From: Guillardia theta CCMP2712
Taxonomy: Eukaryota; Protista; Cryptophyta
Length of the DNA stretch: 64,000 bases
Direction of reading: 5' to 3'
NCBI RefSeq assembly: GCF_000315625.1
Contig: NW_005434665.1
Span: 783,741-847,740 of the forward strand
Positions 41,956 to 52,758 of the stretch are shown piece by piece; the stretch's first letter is position 1; every line of letters begins with the position of its first letter. A program made the translations under genes and the position numbers. Below the pieces are notes generated by a model, which saw only the letters and a program-made list of their open reading frames with translations, did no database searches and had not been told where the DNA came from.

Positions 41956-42523
41956 TTCCCGTTGCAGCATTCTCGCTCTGGTGAACAAGGGCCCCGCGTT
42001 TAGCTAGACTTTGTCGTCGATCTTTATCCAACGCAGCCACTCTTGAGCTAAATCTTGCTTGCCTCTTCCTTTCTTCACCACCTCCACGTCCTCCTCTTCT
42101 TCTCTTTCCCCCTCTCCTCTCCTCTCCTCTTTTCTTTCCCCGTTGCCTTTTCCTCCCGAAAGCGCTTCCGCTACACCCGCCGCATGGCAGCAGGCAAAAG
42201 TTCTTGAGGTGGAACTTAGTGGCTGTTCTGTATGAGGAACATTTATCAAAATGGACGACCCTACCCCACCCAAATTCTCTTTTACTGCAACTGTACCAGA
42301 CTTTTGCAGGGGTGGTCGCCAAATTCCAAAAATGGCAGGGTGGGTTACAGAATAATTGATAGGGGTGGAGGTACTATTCATGGTAGGATATCTGGTGTAG
42401 TATCGGTAGTAGGGCCATTTCTTCAGTACGGTGGGTAGGCTTCGGAATTCTATCTCGTGGGTGGGTGGTCGGTCCTGGATTTCAGAGAGGGGGTGGGGGT
42501 GGATGGGATTGTGAAAGGGCAGC

Positions 42524-44280
42524 ATGGTTGGGGGAAGCAGGAGTATGGTGCTCATGGTGGTGATGATGCTCGTAGCGAGCGCAAGCTGCGTGTCCATTCA
42601 CAAGATTGGCACGGTGAAGGAGACTGGCACGGTGAAGGAGTCCGACAAAGTAGCTCGCGGTGATGTGAACGAGTACTTCGCTGAGGAAACGAACAAGGAG
42701 ATCGTGAAGACTATGGAGGATTTCAAGGCAGGCCATGACTGGGATGTTGGATCGCTCCCTTGTGAGACTGGCCCTGTCCACTTCCAACTGGCATGTAAGT
42801 CAGTCAGCTTTGCCAGAAGAAACCGTGGCAGGACCGTACCATTCAGGGTCAAGAATGGCCAGGTGAAGAAAGACTCTCAGTTGTTCTCAGAGAAGTTCCG
42901 CCCTGAGGAGTCCCGCCACTTCAACGTGGCAGCATCATCCTCGTTTCAAGCACAGACCTCCATGACCTTCGACCTCCATTACGCTGACGGCAGCCACTTG
43001 CGCGGCTTTGGAGGCAAGGATGTAGTGCAACTCGGTGATTACGATGCCAACGCCCCTTTCGGGGTTATCACCGATTGTAACAGCCCGGATTTCAACGGCG
43101 TTGACGGGATTCTTGGGTTCGGTCTACCACGTGCTAACAACAACATGCCTTACCCCATCCTGTTCTCCATCACAGAACAGAACACAGACCTTCTCAGAAA
43201 GTTCACGTTCTTCTCAACGGACGATGCTGCCGAGGTCCAGCTTGGAGGGTACGATCCTTCCAGTACGGCTGGCACAATGTGGTATGTTCCAGCCATGGCG
43301 AAAGATGATTTCATTGTGGGGACGACATCCTTGAAGTTCGGTGACAACCTCAACAGCGCAGTCGAACTGCTGAAGTTCAAGAGCACTGCACAGCAGAAGG
43401 TCGGTATGCCATCGATCTTGGATTCTGGCACTTCCTGCCTCGTCATTCCAGGGGACCGCGGCGGCGGCGTGCTCACCAACATTCCTTGGGATGACTTTGC
43501 CAAGAACTGGAAGAGGGGGCGATCCTTCTGGTTGGAGATTGGACAGAAGACCTGGGAGATCCCGTTCTCGTCGTGGTACCTGGCGGATACTGAGCAGACT
43601 TGCGTCCAGCCCTCTCCGGAGGGCATGCAGGGTCTGTTGATCGGCGACGTCTTCTTCCGGGAATATATCGTCGAGTTTGACATGACTGAATCCCGTCCTA
43701 TTCTGGGTATCGCTCCCTTGAACAAGCATTACAGCCTGGTGAACAAGAACACGCTTGAGTCCCTTGAGGTGGACGTTGCTCCCAAGAGCAAGCTGTCCCT
43801 TATCAAGGGCGCGCAAGTGATGTACCCTGCTGAACATGAGGCAAAGTTGGCCAACGTCGACAGGATTCCTATCGAGAACAGCATGGGAACTCAGTATTTT
43901 ATGGATTTGAAGATTGGCACACCCAAACAAACCTTCACTGTAATCTTCGACACTGGTTCAACTGTCTTCGGAGTATTTACATGGAAGAATAATTTGCCGA
44001 AGGACATCAAGGACAAGCTTCCAAGCTACTACTTCTCCCAGAATCTTTACGGTTTGGAGCAAGTCAAGGTTTCCTCGAGCTCCAATTATTCCAGCATTTT
44101 TTCTGTCAAGGGTGTCTTCATCCTGGCCTGTGTAAACATAGCACTGCTTGCATCGATCAATGTTCTGCTCCGCAGGTTTGAACTTACTTTGGTTCCTTGT
44201 TTTCTGACCTCCTGACTTCTCCCAGGCATCGCCGACGGTCGTACCAGGCAACGGCGAGCGAAACAAGTCCACTGATCTAG
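42524..44280 (+). CDS. Pepsin-family (A1) aspartic protease with permuted motif order, signal peptide and C-terminal TM anchor
   Basis: Flap LHYADGS, DGILGFG, ILDSGTS, LIGDVFFREYIVEFD, then QYFMDLKIGTPKQTFTVIFDTGS and a TM segment. One 3' intron leads to the tail RHRRRSYQATASETSPLI-TAG at 44280. Confidence 0.9.
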
Positions 44281-44444
44281 ATTTGAAGGCTTCTGTGTCG
44301 TTCATTGATAAAGACAACATTTGGGGATGATTATGATGATGGTGCACGAATCAGGTACCGTAAAGATGGTGGTACTCGTAATTTGTGTAGCACAGGAGTG
44401 CAGATGAGAAGGACTTGTTAAGATGAGGAGTTGGCATCAGATCA

Positions 44445-45738: not shown

Positions 45739-45811
45739 TGGGCTCGCCGTGGATCGAACACAGGACCTTTAGATCTTCAGTCTAACGCGCTCCCAACTGC
45801 GCCACAAACCC
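45739..45811 (-). tRNA. tRNA-Phe (GAA), intronless
   Basis: GGGTTTG TG GCGC AGTTGGGA GCGC G TTAGA CTGAAGA TCTAA AGGTC CTGTG TTCGATC CACGG CGAGCCC A folds into a full 73-nt cloverleaf. Confidence 0.97.
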
Positions 45812-45850: not shown

Positions 45851-46205
45851 CAGTGGATAGCCCGCAGCCGCTGACTCACGAGTCAGCCAGTCACGTGGCC
45901 CCCCGGCGACCGTTTAGCCGCCCCGTCACTGTCCGGCCCGGCCCGAGACTCTCCGATTACTGCGCCGTGACCGTAGCTGCCGACAGTCACTGAGTGTCAG
46001 GACGGTTAAGCCTCCTCGGAGGCTCTACACCTGATTGTCCTCTAGCAATGATTCGAACACCGGCGTAGATCAACTGGATGATGGCTCAGAGTCCCGGAGT
46101 CCGGTGGAAACCGAGTTTGTTTTTTGTAAGGTTTTTTTTCCTGACTTTCTTTCTTTTACAAGGACGGTTTACAGGAGAACGTCGTGGAGTTCTTGGCACG
46201 GCAGC

Positions 46206-47782
46206 ATGGCGGCAATTCCTTCGGGGAGGGGGAGCGCAGCGTGGTTGATGTGCGCCTGGGCTCTCACGTGCTCATGGTCCAGCAAGACAGCCTCTGCATT
46301 CTGCCTCCGATCGCATCAACCGTTTCTCCGTCCAACGAGGACACATGGCTCGCAAGGGTGTAGTTCAAGGGTGGCATTCGGGACCTTTGGCGCACATTCA
46401 CGCAGGACGAGGGCGGACATGAGATGGATAGCGAGTGTCGCAGGATCGTCGAAGAAGACAGCCATCGTCACCAACGACAACCACAAGAGGCACAATGGCT
46501 TCATGCATCCTGAATGCCCACAGAGGGTGGATCGCATGTGGGAGGAGATGCGCAAACAGGGGATCGCTGACTCGTGCACGGTCCTCGAGAATCGTCTTGC
46601 TGAGGACAAGGAGATCGAGCTGGTGCACGATAAGAATTATGTGGAATCCATCCTGTCAGGGAGCCCAGAGATCGATGGTAGCACTTACTTCCATAAGAAG
46701 GACTCGGCCTCTGCGAATGCGGCCAGGTCGGCTGCTGGCGCCGTGATCGATGCGGTGGAGGCTGTGTGCAAAGGAGAGGCGAGGAACAGCTTCTGTGCTG
46801 TCAGGCCACCGGGACATCATGCTGAGAGGGATCGCATGATGGGATTCTGCATATTCAACAGGTGAAACTGCTTGACTCCACTCTTATCGATCGTTGCTTG
46901 AGATGGCGATAACTTTATAGCTGACTGCTTTGATTGGCAGCGTCGCCATCGCTGCGGAGAAGGCGAAGAAAGATTGGGGCTGCAACAAGGTGTTGATCTT
47001 CGACTGGGACGTGCACCATGGTAATGGAATCCAACACATCTTCTACGAGGACCCCAGCGTCCTTTATATCTCCATCCACCGAGGAGGTATGGATAAGTCT
47101 TTCTTCTACCCCACCACGGGCACAGCAGGGGAGGTTGGCAGGGGAGAAGGGAGAGGGTTCAACGTTAACATTCCGGTGGAGTTTCCTGGGGTCGGAGATC
47201 CCGTCTACTCCGTCGCCATGGAGCGGATCGTTCTACCCATCGCTCATGCCTTCAAGGTGATCCTTCACCTCTCCCCTGCCGTTGGATGACTCGTTGTGCC
47301 TTCAGCCGGACATCGTCATCGTCAGCGCCGGGTATGACGCTGCCGGTGGCGACCCCCTCGGCGGGATGAACGTCAGCCCGGCCATGTTCCGGAAGATGAC
47401 GAAGCAGATGATGGAAGTGGCCAACCAGCATTGCGATGGCAAGATCGTGTTGGCGCTGGAGGTGCCCTCCTGCTGCAACCCCCCTCCCCCTCGCCATTGT
47501 GGCCACTCACACCGTGCGCGCAGGGAGGCTACGATGTCGATGTCACTGCGGACTGTGCGGTTGAATGCCTCAAGGTGAATGAGTTGGCTTTCTGTTTGAT
47601 CGCAGACTGAGCCACATGTGCAGGAGCTTGTCGGATTGGATGACGAGGTGAAGGAGGAAGAAGACATTGCCCTGAGCCCGTGGGCTGCTGCGGAGTTGCA
47701 GTGGGTGAAACCGTCGATGGATAGAGTCATCGAGATTCAGTCAGAGTTCTGGCCGCAGCTGAAGCAGGAATCTGCCAAGTGA
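46206..47782 (+). CDS. Class II-like histone/lysine deacetylase with ASA-F bipartite leader
   Basis: HPECPQRV, RPPGHHAE..MGFCIFN, DWDVHHGNG, VSAGYDAAGGDPLG, LEGGY. Leader ...WALTCSWSSKTASA-FCL. Confidence 0.92.
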
Positions 47783-48895
47783 TTCAGCGCAGACCAGGGA
47801 CCTTTGGGAGAGAAGGGTTCCTGAAAGTTTTTTCCATGCTGCTCTCTTTGCTCGATGTTGTGAAATCAACGGATTTCTTGGAATAAAGAGTTTTTCTGTA
47901 CCGAACAGAGACTTTCAACTGGGGCCGACAGTCTTCATGGTCTCGAATCTTGACGATGCCTCCTCTCCTCTCCCCTCCTCTCCCCTCCTCTCCCCTCCTC
48001 TCCCCTCCTCTCCCCTCCTCTCCCCTCCCCTCCGTTCCTCCCCTCCTCTCCTCGATCCTCTTCGCTCCTGACGTCCTCTCCCTCTATCTCGCCCATCGCC
48101 CCGACATAATTCATTTTTCCGTCAGGTCCGAACATTCTAGCGGAATATGCCGAACGATGAAAACTATTCGGAAGTGGGTAGGGGGTACATGAGTACCCCA
48201 CCATACATAAAGATAATTGTCTAGTCACTAGGGGTAATTTACTCCAAGGTGGGGTGGGTGCAAAGGTTATTATGCGGTGCATCTTTCATGGGACGAGGAA
48301 AGGCGGGGGAGAGGAGGGAGGAGGGAGAGGGAAGGAGGGAGGGAGCGGGAAGATCAGACAGAAGAAGAGGTGCAATGGGATGAGATTGCGATGCGTTTGA
48401 GTTGGAAGAAGTTGGAGAGGGAGGATAGATCTCTGAGTAAGGCGAACAGACAGAGGGCACCTTACGAGAGAGTGAAAATGCCATGGAGGAAGCTCGACAG
48501 TGATTAAGGCACAAGGCACTCAGTAACTTCGAGGAGGGAGATAGAAAGAAGGAATCTGGTAGGAGAGATAGAGAGATGGCAATCATCCCAGAGTGTACTT
48601 GTTCGACGCAGCAAAGCAAACTCACTGTAACGAGAAGAGTTGGCTTGTAAAGGAAAAGGCACATAGCTATGAACAATAGTATTGCTTATCATGCGGATCC
48701 GCTTTCAATATGAAGTATTTTCACAGCCATGATATGAAACATTGATTGAGAATAGATGAGAAATGATATGCATCAAACATCGTTGTTGACCCGATTCGCA
48801 GGCCATGTTGTTGATTCGTGCCAGGGTCTCATGACTTTGTGATTTTTCTGAGCCAACCTTGGGGAATTTTGCTGATCGAGTCATCACTTGAAAAG

Positions 48896-51800
48896 ATGGA
48901 GATCGAACAGTTCGAGGACTTGCTCAAGACGATGGTTGATCTTGAAAAACAAGAGCAGGAACGGCAACAGGCAAGGCAGATCGTTGAGAACATTCTCGAT
49001 TGCGTCTTGCAAACGAACGTTTCTCATGAGCAGAGAAAGAAAGCTGAGGAGTGTGTAAACAATCTGGCGAATCCAGTGAATCTGAACATTACAAATGATG
49101 CTATTCTCGCTCAATCTCTGTCCGACAACTTCACCAGAAAGCAAATCGCCATTCAGAAACGCCTTGCACAACTGCAATACATTCTTGATAACTCGACGTC
49201 TCACTATGCTCAGGCTGTTGCTTGCAACAGTTTGTCGCTGCTTGTCACAAACAATTGGAATGAGAAGATGATTCCCTACACAGAAATTAAGAATTATGCT
49301 CTCAGTTTCTTGTTCACGCACGCCACAGACCCGAACTGCCCACCTTTCGTGAAGCAAGGGATGGTCAGGCTGCTCTCGAGGGTTGCTAGGTTGTGCCGAG
49401 TGAGCAATGGGCCTGACTGTGCGATCATGAATGATCTGAGCAAGATGTTTGAGACGTCGGTGGAACATTTCATCCTGGGGATGCGAATATTGCTGGATTA
49501 CGTAGAGGAAATTGTCGCAAAGGCTGGAGAGGTTTCTTTCTTGCACCGGAGGATGTTCTTTTATTCCGATTTGACGACCATCTTGAAGTTTGCTCTGGAA
49601 TCTGTTCGCAAGTACTTCTCGAACATGAGCTCAGAAAACGATAAGTTGCTCCTGGACTCTGCTCTAGAACTTACCGTCCGCTGCCTGACTAGTCCGGATG
49701 CAGACAGGACGTACGACAAGGACGAGATGGATCTCGGCCGGGGGCTGATCCTTGCCAAGTGGAGCCCCTTCATCACTCAGATGGAGCTGATCGACATGTT
49801 CATCGTCATGTACGGCTCGCTGGATGCTCCGATCTCGACGCGGGCCCTGACGATATTGCTCTTCATCTCATCGCTGAGACCCGGCATGTACCGATCTATC
49901 GCAGACTTCCAGAATGCCACCAAGAGGATCATCATGGGGATCGGGCAGATTCTCAAGAACAGGAAGGAGCTCGACAACCCCAACAACCTCGACATCTTCT
50001 GCAGGTTCTTGAGCGAGTTCGGACAAGTCTGTATCATCTGGAAGTACATCCCGAAGAACGAGTGTAACGAGTTCATCGAGATGGCATCATCGCTGACCCT
50101 CGCAATCTTGCGGGAGCTGGAGCCCCCTCCCAACAGCGTCTACCACCTTCTCCACTTCTGGTGTAGGCTGGCCGTGTCCGAGATGGGGCGAGGGAGGAGC
50201 TCGCCGCGATCTCCCGATCTTCAGATCGTGCACGAGGAGATTGAAGAGGCGGACGATAACCTCGGGGACCTCTACGATGTGCTAGAGCGAACTCTGCCCG
50301 CCATCGTCTACACGTACATCACTGGGAGGATCGAGTGCATTCAAGCTGCTGCATCTGGTGGCGCTGACAACCCCTTGGAGGACATCGACTCGCTGGAAAA
50401 CCAGCTGGAGCTGATCCCGATCCTTTGCACCATCCGGTACGAGAAGATCGGAGGGCAGCTGTTCGAAATGATCGACCACTTCTACAACGTCTACGAGGCC
50501 GCCTTTAGCAGCTCCAACCAGGTGCAGCTGGAAGTGCTGGAGATGCAGATTGCATGGATGATCCGGTTGTGTTCTGCCATCGTGGGAGGCCACTACACGG
50601 TGAGGGCAGGGAGCTTCCGCTCCTTCGACATCAACCCCATTATCGAGACGACGCTGCAGGAGGGAGAGGAGCTGGTGGACGCAGAGCTGATAGGAAAGGT
50701 CTTCAGGCTGATGATGCTGATCCAGAGAAGAATCTCAGTCTCCAACACCCAGGACAAGTGCGACTACAGGCTGGAGCTTGCCGTCCTCACTTTCCTGGAG
50801 AAGCTCAAGCTGGGCCTCCTGTATGTGGACAGGACCCTTGCAGAGCAGAAAGAGGACACAGGGCAGATCCCGGAGTACCTGCCCTCGTTCCTCCGACGGC
50901 TGGTGATCAGGCGACCGAAACCCATCCTGACGCAAGACATGCACATTGAAATCTTCAAACGGATCGGTTTCAACGATCACATGGAGGTGATCAACATGAT
51001 GCTGGGGAAGCTGCTGGAGAACCTACAGGTCTGGGGCCACAACTCGATGGTGGTCAAGGAGACCCTCCACCTGCTGGGGATCATCATCCACGGTACATCA
51101 GGGGAGGGAACATTGTCAATGCTGCTGGAGATTGAGACGATCAAGGGTCTGATGAAGAATCACGCAGCTGTATCGTCCTCATTCCTCAACTATCCCGCTA
51201 ACGCAAAGAATCGCACCAATTACTACCTGACCATCACGCAGCTCTTCTTGCTGGAGGAGGACGACGCAGAGGCGTCTGGATCTTTTGAGACGTTTCTTGA
51301 GCCCACCATCACGACGCTGGTTCAGCTCAAGAACACGGCGAACTTGCGGACGGACGAGGCTCGCTTCGCCATCATCGGGGTCGCTAGGGATCTTCGAGGG
51401 ATCGCATGCGCAACGGACGGGAAACTCTTCCACGTGCTGTTTGACATGATGTTCCCTGCCTGTCAAAACGTGTTCGCTCGCTGCCTCGAATGCTGGGCGG
51501 ACGATCCAGCCGTCTGCATCGCTGTCCTCAAGATGTGGATGGAGATCGCTTCCAATGCCAGAAATCGCATCTCCTTCGATGCCGGAATCCCCGCCGGCCT
51601 CGTCATCTTCAAGGAGCTGGCCATGACCATCATCGTCTACTGCCGCTACCTGCTGTCCAAGGGCCCCAACTCTGGCGGCATGGACCCCTACAACAACCGT
51701 TACAAGTGCATCGGAATCTGTATGCTGAGCATGACGCTCGCACTCTCCGGGGAGTACGTTGGATTTGGCGCCTTCTCCATGTACGGGGACAGCGTGGTGG

Positions 51801-52758
51801 AAGACGTGTTCAAGCTGATTGTCCAAGTGGGCCTGTCGATGCCGCAGAACGACATCCTGGCCTACCACAAGGTCGCGATCTCCTTCTATTCCTGCATCGA
51901 GGCCATGTTCAAGCACGCCATTTCCATCGTGATCGGTCTGGAGACTGTAGAAGTCACGCAGATACTTCAGGTGGAGATGTCTTCCCTCCTGTGAATGTTG
52001 TCAACTTCTGGATCTCACGTTCCGCTGCAGATCGTGTACAACGGCTTGACAAACGCTCTGCACCCGAGCGTCCACGTCATGTGTGCTTCTACCATTGAGA
52101 GTTTCGCCATCTTCCTCTTCCGCACGAGCAAGAGACGCTCGTCCCTGGCGGTCAGGATGAGGCTCCATCTCGAGCAGGTGAGTGCATCCGACCCGCCCCG
52201 ACCCCATGGTGAGACGAGCGATGGCTCAGGTACCCACCCTGCTCGGCGACTTGCAGCTGGTGCTGCTCAAGCAGGTGATCTTCAACGACGTGGTCGGGCT
52301 GGAGCTCTTGGCCTTCCCGCTCCTCTCACTCATCTTGGCTGCTGAGACAACTTTCACCGCTGTCACAAACGAGGTTTGTCGTTGTCCTTTCCTCTCCCTC
52401 TCCTCCTGCCACTCGCCCATTCAGTTCTATCTGGACCAGTCTCTCCCTGCTCCTGCCCCTCGTTACGATGCTTTCTCCCTTCCTCCTCTCCCCTCCTCAT
52501 AGCAAGAAGTTGAATTTCCCTGACCCCTCTGCCAGTTTGTAGCGAGACAAAGTCAACAAGGAGGGCTCTGCCTGATGGAGGCGCTGAAGCTACTGATGCA
52601 AGGTAGAGGAGCGGGGGAGGGCGGGGAGCACGCAAATGACCGATGCCTTCGCAGATGTGAACAAGAACCTCGAAGGATTCAATCGAGGCAAGTTCATCAA
52701 GAACGTGGAGAGGTTCAGGGCGGAGCTGAAGGACGTAAGGGACGTCCTCGTGGTCTGA
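48896..52758 (+). CDS. Exportin-7/RanBP16-17-like karyopherin
   Basis: Over 1000-aa helical protein with SVYHLLHFW, ARDLRGIA, VLKMWMEIASNARNRISFD and YKCIGICMLSMTLALSGEYVGFGAFSMYGD, resembling XPO7 motifs. Confidence 0.85.

What the first reader, a model, noticed from the sequence alone, without database searches (positions are those of the whole stretch)
42524..44280. Apparently circularly permuted pepsin-family aspartic protease
Seen: in one uninterrupted exon the order is signal peptide, RHFNVAASSSF, flap LHYADGS (Tyr ~153), DGILGFG (~195), ILDSGTS (Asp ~300, nt 43421), LIGDVFFREYIVEFD..LGIA (~372, the normal pepsin C-terminus). Only then come KLSLIKG (propeptide-like) and IPIENSMGTQYFMDLKIGTPKQTFTVIFDTGSTVFGV (Asp ~476, nt 43949). 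Established: in family A1 the Y..I.IGTP.Q.F.V.FDTGS segment carries the first catalytic Asp at the mature N-terminus, before the flap. No D(T/S)G precedes the flap here (only CETGP and WDVGS). Inference: the first ~40 mature residues, perhaps with a propeptide remnant, moved to the C-terminus. This is feasible because pepsin termini share the interdomain sheet. Both Asps are kept, so it may be active with a non-standard activation mechanism. I know of no natural permuted A1 protease.
Basis: partly seen in the sequence, partly recalled or inferred. Interest (0 to 1): 0.9.

Follow-up and report, generated by a model that had tools for sequence, protein, structure and literature searches.

The report
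Circularly permuted membrane-anchored pepsin-type protease
This expressed gene of the cryptophyte alga Guillardia theta encodes a pepsin-type protease in which the first ~42 residues of the fold, carrying one of the two catalytic aspartates, sit at the end of the chain beside a membrane anchor; every pepsin-type gene I could read in this genome has the same order, and I found no paper describing it.

Summary

**Gene.** It is Guillardia theta GUITHDRAFT_161360 (568 aa), coded by 42524-44175 plus 44226-44280.

**Expression.** Spliced cDNA contigs from three studies cover the whole coding sequence. They start 11-32 nt upstream of the ATG, so assembly error and an upstream DTG exon are excluded.

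**Chain order.**
- Residues 124-400 superpose on pepsin 47-326 (Z 22.5, rmsd 2.1 Å).
- Residues 445-485 match pepsin or chymosin 1-42.
- A transmembrane helix and a short tail ending ETSPLI follow.

**Conservation.** Tyr153, D300-SGTS and D476-TGS are invariant in 89 aligned homologues.

**Model.** AlphaFold gives one confident domain (pLDDT 89.9, pTM 0.88).

**Distribution.**
- About 24 loci in this genome match the family profile. In the 20 where both pieces are found, the order is permuted. None is canonical.
- The same order occurs in six other cryptophyte genera, in a divergent Ancoracysta protein, and in many environmental sequences.

**Origin.** Tandem-duplicated canonical A1 proteins exist, for example in Cymbomonas. 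They are the kind of intermediate that permutation by duplication requires.

**Prior work.** No publication was found. This scan had already reached the same conclusion on two other paralogues of this genome (s1-445486, s1-436885).

The parts
42492..42523 (+). 5' UTR. The cDNA contigs begin at 42492, 42511 and 42513.
   Evidence: table 8
42524..44175 (+). Coding exon 1 (codons 1-550 plus 2 nt)
42524..42598 (+). Predicted signal peptide (about aa 1-25), with a hydrophobic core MVLMVVMMLVASASC
   Evidence: Read from the sequence. AF2 gives helix 7-17. The cleavage site is inferred.
42599..42868 (+). Variable N-terminal extension (aa 26-115). It has no Pfam match and low pLDDT, and it is absent from the ~475-aa homologues.
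42893..43723 (+). Body of the pepsin fold (aa 124-400), equivalent to pepsin residues 47-326: the rest of the N-lobe plus the whole C-lobe.
   Evidence: VIA-align to 6xcy gives Z 22.5, rmsd 2.1, 252 aligned. Pfam PF00026, E 3e-32.
42980..42982 (+). Flap tyrosine Tyr153 (equivalent to pepsin Tyr75). It is invariant in the 22-sequence alignment and at least 90% conserved in the 89-sequence alignment.
43421..43435 (+). D300-S-G-T-S, the C-lobe catalytic motif (equivalent to pepsin Asp215). Invariant in 89 sequences.
43724..43852 (+). Linker (aa 401-443) joining the old C-terminus to the old N-terminus. It is weakly conserved and variable in length. It has one modelled strand (410-418), and the rest has lower pLDDT.
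43853..43984 (+). Transposed N-terminal segment (aa 444-487), equivalent to pepsin or chymosin residues about 1-42, with strands at 457-464, 469-476 and 482-485.
   Evidence: (chymosin 2-42, E 4e-11)
43949..43960 (+). D476-T-G-S, the N-lobe catalytic motif (equivalent to pepsin Asp32). Invariant in 89 sequences.
43985..44104 (+). Variable spacer (aa 488-527) between the fold and the membrane anchor
44105..44175 (+). Transmembrane helix. AF2 gives a helix at 528-559, and the best hydrophobic window starts at aa 531.
44176..44225 (+). 50-nt GT..AG intron, removed in the cDNA contigs of three runs and in one raw RNA-seq read
   Evidence: table 5
44226..44280 (+). Coding exon 2: the end of the basic stop-transfer cluster and a short cytosolic tail ending ETSPLI (an acidic dileucine-type motif), then the stop TAG at 44278-44280.
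   Evidence: The tail is read from P0001.
44281..44364 (+). 3' UTR. The cDNA contigs end at 44327-44364.

Best explanation
The gene encodes a type I membrane-anchored aspartic endopeptidase of the pepsin family (A1). Its polypeptide is a natural circular permutant of the canonical fold.

The chain order is:
- a signal peptide and a paralogue-specific extension;
- a start at the equivalent of pepsin residue ~47, running through the flap (Tyr153), the rest of the N-lobe and the whole C-lobe (Asp300, equivalent to Asp215) to the old C-terminus (~aa 400);
- a ~43-residue linker that leads back to the old N-terminus;
- the first four beta-strands of the N-lobe, carrying Asp476 (equivalent to Asp32), which are supplied last;
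- a spacer, a transmembrane helix and a short cytosolic tail with an adaptor-type sorting motif.

In pepsin the two termini lie side by side in the interdomain sheet, so the segment can insert in cis and complete a normal Asp-Asp dyad.

Shown here: the order, its expression, its family-wide conservation, invariance of the two catalytic motifs in 89 sequences with the flap tyrosine almost invariant, and a confident single-domain model.

Inferred:
- catalytic activity at acid pH in an endosomal, lysosomal or vacuolar compartment;
- no active site can form until the last luminal segment has been translocated, and there is no classical N-terminal propeptide;
- origin by tandem duplication of an A1 gene followed by loss of both ends, once, before the cryptophyte paralogues radiated.
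For: - **Sequence order:** Pfam and PDB searches give swapped split hits.
- **Structure:** residues 124-400 superpose on pepsin 47-326 with Z 22.5 and rmsd 2.1-2.2 Å. AF2 gives pLDDT 90-98 for 121-410 and for 441-510 in the full-length model. The domain-only model has pLDDT 89.9 and pTM 0.88.
- **Conservation:** D300-SGTSC, D476-TGS, DGILGFG and GDVFFR are invariant in 89 sequences, and Tyr153 is invariant in the 22-sequence set. 113 of 120 homologues show DSG then DTG at ~176-207 aa spacing, and none is canonical.
- **N-terminus:** short homologues start the body right after the signal peptide, so nothing at the N-terminus can replace the missing strands.
- **Expression:** spliced cDNA contigs from 3 studies and MMETSP transcripts of other genera.
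- **This genome:** ~24 loci, 20 with both pieces, always body then N-segment. TAXi_N and TAXi_C scans add no canonical gene.
- **Membrane anchor:** 154 of 170 permuted proteins have a hydrophobic helix after the N-segment. 81 of these have YxxΦ and 8 have [DE]xxxL[LI] in the tail.
- **Possible intermediate type:** tandem canonical A1 proteins P0254 (Cymbomonas) and P0187 align across their domain junction to the permuted order.
Against: - The Asp300-Asp476 distance and a non-sequential superposition on pepsin could not be computed, so docking rests on AF2 confidence and strand register.
- There is no biochemical evidence of activity, pepstatin sensitivity, localisation or processing.
- The raw RNA-seq run sampled gave only 16 reads. 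The expression evidence is mainly assembled contigs.
- Four loci in this genome show no detectable N-segment within the DNA examined.
- The duplication-and-truncation origin is a standard model, not demonstrated here. The tandem proteins found are not shown to be close relatives of the permuted clade.
Confidence: 0.82

Rival explanations
1. The permuted segment works in trans. The C-terminal DTGS strands of one molecule insert into the N-lobe of a neighbour, giving a domain-swapped dimer or oligomer on the membrane. The active enzyme would then be obligatorily multimeric.
For: The linker is long (~43 aa here, ~150 aa longer in Ancoracysta P0159) and weakly conserved, so it does not force cis insertion. 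Membrane tethering raises local concentration. No coordinates or multimer model were available to exclude it.
Against: The AF2 monomer model places the segment with pLDDT 83-95 and pTM 0.88. The old termini are neighbours in the pepsin fold (established knowledge), so cis closure is the simplest path.
Confidence: 0.07
2. It is a catalytically dead pepsin-fold protein that serves as a binding protein or receptor, like the TAXI xylanase inhibitors or pregnancy-associated glycoproteins.
For: No activity data exist. There is no recognisable propeptide. The family has expanded to ~24 loci, a pattern also seen in non-enzymatic A1 offshoots.
Against: Both D(T/S)G(S/T) motifs and both psi-loop glycine motifs are invariant across 89 sequences down to ~35% identity, and the flap Tyr is invariant in the 22-sequence alignment and at least 90% conserved in the 89-sequence one. 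Inactive A1 relatives typically lose these residues.
Confidence: 0.06
3. It is an artefact or a decaying remnant: a misassembly, a mis-joined gene model, or the stub of a second tandem domain that is being lost.
For: Tandem A1 duplications do exist in other eukaryotes.
Against: cDNA contigs from three studies are contiguous across the junction. The order, spacing and invariant FDTGS are the same in more than 110 homologues from at least 7 genera. The segment is followed by a TM anchor, not by a further body.
Confidence: 0.01

Closest known systems
Pepsin, chymosin, renin and cathepsin D (canonical MEROPS family A1, Pfam PF00026)
   Same: The bilobal fold is the same: Z 22-23, rmsd ~2.1-2.3 Å over ~250 residues. 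Both catalytic D(T/S)G(S/T) motifs, the flap Tyr and the psi-loop motifs are present, so the chemistry is presumably the same.
   Different: The chain starts at the equivalent of residue ~47 and ends with residues 1-42. No A1 propeptide was detected. It is membrane-anchored.
BACE1/BACE2 (memapsins), plasmepsin V and plasmepsin X
   Same: BACE1/2 and plasmepsin V are type I membrane-anchored A1 proteases, and BACE has a short cytosolic tail carrying a dileucine-type sorting signal (my own knowledge). Plasmepsin X and BACE1 are among the top structural matches.
   Different: Their order is canonical. The anchor follows the C-lobe, whereas here it follows the transposed N-lobe strands. BACE has an N-terminal propeptide.
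Swaposin, the plant-specific insert of phytepsin-type A1 proteases
   Same: It is the only circular permutation that the literature searched links to aspartic proteases.
   Different: The permuted unit is the inserted saposin-like domain, not the protease fold. The protease itself has the canonical order.
Tandem-duplicated canonical A1 proteins (Cymbomonas tetramitiformis KAK3284678.1 = P0254, 772 aa; metagenomic P0187, 704 aa)
   Same: Read across the domain junction, they have the order body then DTGS segment, and they align to the permuted profile that way. This is the intermediate that the duplication-and-truncation model expects.
   Different: They contain two complete domains, each in canonical order, and share only ~25-28% identity with the permuted family. 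No direct ancestry is shown.
Type III metacaspases of phytoplankton, with swapped p10-p20 order (PMC3734836)
   Same: This is another protease family whose segment order is rearranged in algae including cryptophytes. The authors discuss it as circular permutation.
   Different: The fold and catalytic type are unrelated (cysteine peptidase family C14).

Membership tests
Peptidase family A1 (pepsin family, Pfam PF00026) | Significant sequence match to the family profile | tested here: met
   PF00026 scores 112.7 bits (cut-off 19.9), E 3e-32, but as split hits. PDB phmmer hits pepsin, renin and chymosin.
Peptidase family A1 (pepsin family, Pfam PF00026) | Bilobal pepsin fold | tested here: met
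   AF2 models. VIA-align gives Z 22-23.6 and rmsd 2.0-2.5 Å to renin, pepsin, cathepsin D and plasmepsin X. Only the 277-residue body can be aligned sequentially.
Peptidase family A1 (pepsin family, Pfam PF00026) | Two catalytic Asp residues in D(T/S)G(S/T) motifs, plus the flap Tyr75 | tested here: met
   D300-SGT and D476-TGS are invariant in 89 sequences. Y153 is invariant in the 22-sequence alignment and at least 90% conserved in the 89-sequence one.
Peptidase family A1 (pepsin family, Pfam PF00026) | Canonical linear order: N-terminal DTG strand, then flap, then C-lobe DTG | tested here: not met
   The order here is flap, then C-lobe DSG, then N-terminal DTG strand. It is a homologue by descent with a permuted topology.
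Peptidase family A1 (pepsin family, Pfam PF00026) | N-terminal activation propeptide (A1_Propeptide, PF07966) | tested here: not met
   No Pfam hit in residues 26-118 or in the whole protein. Many homologues have no N-terminal extension at all. Linker-to-propeptide homology is inconclusive.
Peptidase family A1 (pepsin family, Pfam PF00026) | Two Asp carboxylates within hydrogen-bonding distance in one active site | not testable with these tools
   Model coordinates are not exposed. There is only indirect support from pLDDT, pTM and strand register.
Peptidase family A1 (pepsin family, Pfam PF00026) | Pepstatin-sensitive endopeptidase activity at acid pH | not testable with these tools
   This requires expression and an enzyme assay.
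Natural circular permutant (in the sense of Lindqvist and Schneider, and Bliven and Prlic, PMC3320104) | The same fold and homologous sequence, with the N- and C-terminal parts exchanged and no duplicated remainder | tested here: met
   The body corresponds to pepsin 47-326 and the tail to pepsin 1-42, with a clean cut near residues 42-46 and no second body.

The most novel reading that the evidence does not exclude
This would be the first natural circular permutation of the classic pepsin fold. It is not a one-off: a whole eukaryotic lineage (the cryptophytes, with divergent members in Ancoracysta and in unnamed protists) appears to have replaced the canonical A1 protease entirely by the permutant. 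That implies a different route to folding and latency. There is no N-terminal prosegment, and the Asp32 strand is delivered last, next to the membrane. The family may also preserve the duplication-and-truncation pathway in extant tandem A1 genes.
Probability: 0.75. Interest if true: 0.78.

Novelty: new variant of a known kind. Interest (0 to 1): 0.72.

Why it matters
Pepsin-family proteases are among the best-studied enzymes. Their zymogen activation depends on a propeptide attached to the N-terminal strand, which is exactly the strand relocated here.

- **Folding and activation:** a natural, expressed and widely conserved permutant shows that the fold tolerates a new chain start inside the N-lobe. 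It also offers a system for asking how latency and activation work without a classical prosegment.
- **Protein evolution:** it is a concrete case for the duplication-and-truncation model, because tandem intermediates exist.
- **Annotation:** domain-order-blind annotation ("Peptidase A1 domain-containing protein") has hidden the feature in public databases. Linear-profile pipelines will truncate or split such genes.

Tried and rejected
1. **Degenerate N-terminal DTG.** I looked for a degenerate motif in residues 26-123 (WDVGS, KKDSQ). I rejected it because homologues of ~475 aa lack this region, AF2 gives it pLDDT below 50 and Pfam finds nothing.
2. **Continuation of a second domain downstream.** None exists. 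The cDNA ends at ~44364, followed by tRNA-Phe and an unrelated histone-deacetylase gene.
3. **Model coordinates.** I tried to obtain them to measure the Asp-Asp distance. They are not stored in /data.
4. **Linker as a propeptide remnant.** The profile of linker plus N-segment against PDB zymogens extends only ~3-12 residues into the propeptides, which is inconclusive.
5. **ESM Atlas searches by features and by shape.** They returned only canonical A1 clusters with TM ~0.6 and gave no taxonomic gain.
6. **Naming the source organisms.** Three cluster look-ups named only cryptophytes, Ancoracysta and Cymbomonas.
7. **Literature.** Eight searches found no description.
8. **Contact prediction by covariation.** I did not attempt it, because there are too few effective sequences.
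9. **Spliced protein.** The spliced protein used throughout is the database entry P0001.

Full report
**What is there**

The window carries an ORF at 42524..44215 on the + strand (563 aa). It is 100% identical to Guillardia theta CCMP2712 GUITHDRAFT_161360 (P0001, 568 aa). P0001, returned by the database search, is the spliced product and was used by reference.

Contigs of three public runs from three different studies (1804, 1786 and 1775 nt) lie on 42492/42511/42513..44172. They skip 50 nt with GT..AG ends and continue to 44327-44364 without a single differing letter. Because they lack the intron, these contigs are cDNA.

The coding sequence is therefore 42524-44175 plus 44226-44280. The mRNA begins 11-32 nt before the ATG. 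The upstream neighbour's transcript ends at 42429. Misassembly and a hidden upstream exon are excluded.

**The observation**

Only two D[TS]G motifs exist: Asp300 (ILDSGTSC) and Asp476 (IFDTGST).

- Pfam Asp matches residues 129-391 to profile positions 41-309 (E 3e-32). Residues 458-481 match positions 1-24 of the related TAXi_N model.
- phmmer against PDB aligns 129-398 with pepsin 52-324, and 444-481 with pepsinogen 44-81. That puts Asp476 on pepsin Asp32 and Tyr153 on the flap Tyr75.
- A family profile of linker plus tail hits chymosin residues 2-42 at E 4e-11.

**Structure**

- An AlphaFold2 model of the full protein, built from an 89-sequence alignment, has pLDDT 90-98 for residues 121-410 and again for 441-510. 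The linker scores 59-84, residues 1-120 score below 50, and there is a helix at 528-559.
- The domain alone (116-500) gives mean pLDDT 89.9 and pTM 0.88, with the transposed segment at 83-95.
- VIA-align places residues 124-400 on porcine pepsin 47-326 (6xcy: Z 22.5, rmsd 2.1-2.2 Å, 252 aligned). Scores for renin, cathepsin D and plasmepsin X are similar.
- The modelled strands 457-464, 469-476 and 482-485 fall where the sequence alignment puts pepsin 13-20, 25-32 and 38-41. The third strand ends on the catalytic Asp, as in pepsin (my own knowledge of the fold).
The Asp-Asp distance therefore remains unmeasured. This is the main gap.

**Conservation**

- Of the 120 best homologues, 113 have DSGTSC first and FDTGS about 176-207 residues later. 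The other 7 show no second motif. None has the canonical order.
- In the 89-sequence alignment, D300-S-G-T-S-C, D476-T-G-S, much of DGILGFG and of GDVFFR, and three cysteines are invariant. Tyr153 is invariant in the 22-sequence set and at least 90% conserved in the 89.
- Homologues of ~475 aa begin the body directly after the signal peptide. Nothing at the N-terminus can stand in for the missing strands.
- The linker is poorly conserved and variable in length.
- After the transposed segment come a variable spacer, a hydrophobic helix, a basic cluster and a short tail. Of 170 permuted proteins with enough sequence, 154 have this helix. In the tail, 81 carry YxxΦ (often a terminal YGAI or YGTL) and 8 carry [DE]xxxL[LI]. 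The present gene ends ...ETSPLI.
- Both motif types are adaptor-protein sorting signals (established knowledge). Endosomal, lysosomal or vacuolar residence is an inference from them.

**Distribution**

- Within G. theta, a PF00026 scan found no locus with a contiguous canonical match.
- Family-specific HMMs and a profile search give about 24 loci. In the 20 where both pieces are detectable, the N-segment lies downstream of the body on the same strand. Intron-rich copies are included, and their exons are colinear with the permuted profile.
- TAXi_N and TAXi_C scans add nothing.
- An exhaustive profile search of 1.84 billion representatives finds 116 clusters at E<1e-30. Nearly all members long enough to judge are permuted.
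- Named members come from Guillardia, Hanusia, Rhodomonas, Hemiselmis, Baffinella and Teleaulax, all cryptophytes. One comes from Ancoracysta twista.
- The Ancoracysta protein is only 29-32% identical to the cryptophyte members, yet it has the same architecture: signal peptide, body, linker, N-segment, TM helix.
- In a quick ML tree of the body region, rooted on three canonical rows, the named cryptophyte sequences form one clade (SH-aLRT 98). Ancoracysta and about a dozen unnamed permuted sequences lie outside it.
- That tree has few canonical rows and several long branches. It only suggests that the permutation is older or wider than the core cryptophyte radiation.

**Origin**

Three canonical-order proteins appear among the top hits. 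Two of them are tandem duplications of a complete A1 domain: P0254 from the green alga Cymbomonas (772 aa) and metagenomic P0187 (704 aa). They align to the permuted family straight across their domain junction.

Such proteins are the intermediate required by the standard permutation-by-duplication model. Their existence makes that path plausible but does not prove ancestry.

**How it most likely works**

The protein is translocated into the ER lumen and anchored by its C-terminal helix.

- The body folds as an incomplete N-lobe plus a complete C-lobe.
- The last luminal segment then inserts as the first four N-lobe strands and brings Asp476 next to Asp300 under the Tyr153 flap.
- The result is an ordinary acid endopeptidase active site (inferred, confidence about 0.8).
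- A functional site cannot form before the whole ectodomain is made, and there is no classical prosegment.
- Whether the linker or the paralogue-specific N-extension (aa 26-115) regulates activity is unknown.
- Insertion in trans (a domain swap) and loss of catalysis are minor rivals.

**Novelty and surroundings**

Eight full-text searches found no description of a permuted A1 protease. The literature links circular permutation to aspartic proteases only through the swaposin insert. A rearranged order is described for type III metacaspases of the same algae.

This scan has already reported the same phenomenon for two other paralogues in this genome (s1-445486, s1-436885). My independent tests agree with both.

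The surroundings are unrelated: tRNA-Phe at 45739-45811 (-), a histone-deacetylase-domain ORF from 46035, and an exportin-7-like ORF from 48818.

Noticed in passing
window 45739-45811 (-): A tRNA-Phe (GAA) gene lies 1.4 kb downstream of the protease gene, on the opposite strand.
   Followed up: partly
window 46035-46865 (+) and 48818-51994 (+): The neighbouring ORFs carry a histone deacetylase domain (PF00850, E 1.5e-29) and exportin-7-like TPR repeats (PF25795, E 3.6e-42). They are unrelated to the protease, and there is no tandem A1 neighbour in the window.
   Followed up: partly
window 42429-42492: The upstream neighbour's cDNA contig ends at 42429, and this gene's cDNA contigs start at 42492-42513. 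The intergenic gap is only ~60-80 nt.
   Followed up: no
P0272 (NCBI MGB1592005.1), cluster of P0121: A protein labelled 'MAG: pepsin-like aspartyl protease [Promethearchaeia archaeon]' sits in the same 90%-identity cluster as a Teleaulax amphioxeia (cryptophyte) transcript. It is most likely a eukaryotic contig mis-binned into an Asgard archaeal MAG.
   Followed up: no
P0254 (Cymbomonas tetramitiformis KAK3284678.1) and P0187 (metagenome): Both are tandem duplications of a complete canonical A1 protease domain in one polypeptide (DTG/DSG motifs at 94/279/462/647 and at 46/224/408/586). In P0187 the two body segments were collapsed as identical rows in the trimmed tree alignment.
   Followed up: partly
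P0159 (Ancoracysta twista, EukProt EP00164): A divergent permuted A1 protease (29-32% identity to cryptophyte members). Its linker is much longer and of low complexity, and it has a long Ser/Gly/His-rich cytosolic tail.
   Followed up: partly
G000 contig C9, 1007151-1007897 (-), about 180 kb from this gene: A second, divergent A1 paralogue lies on the same contig. Its N-segment was not detected within the flanks examined.
   Followed up: no
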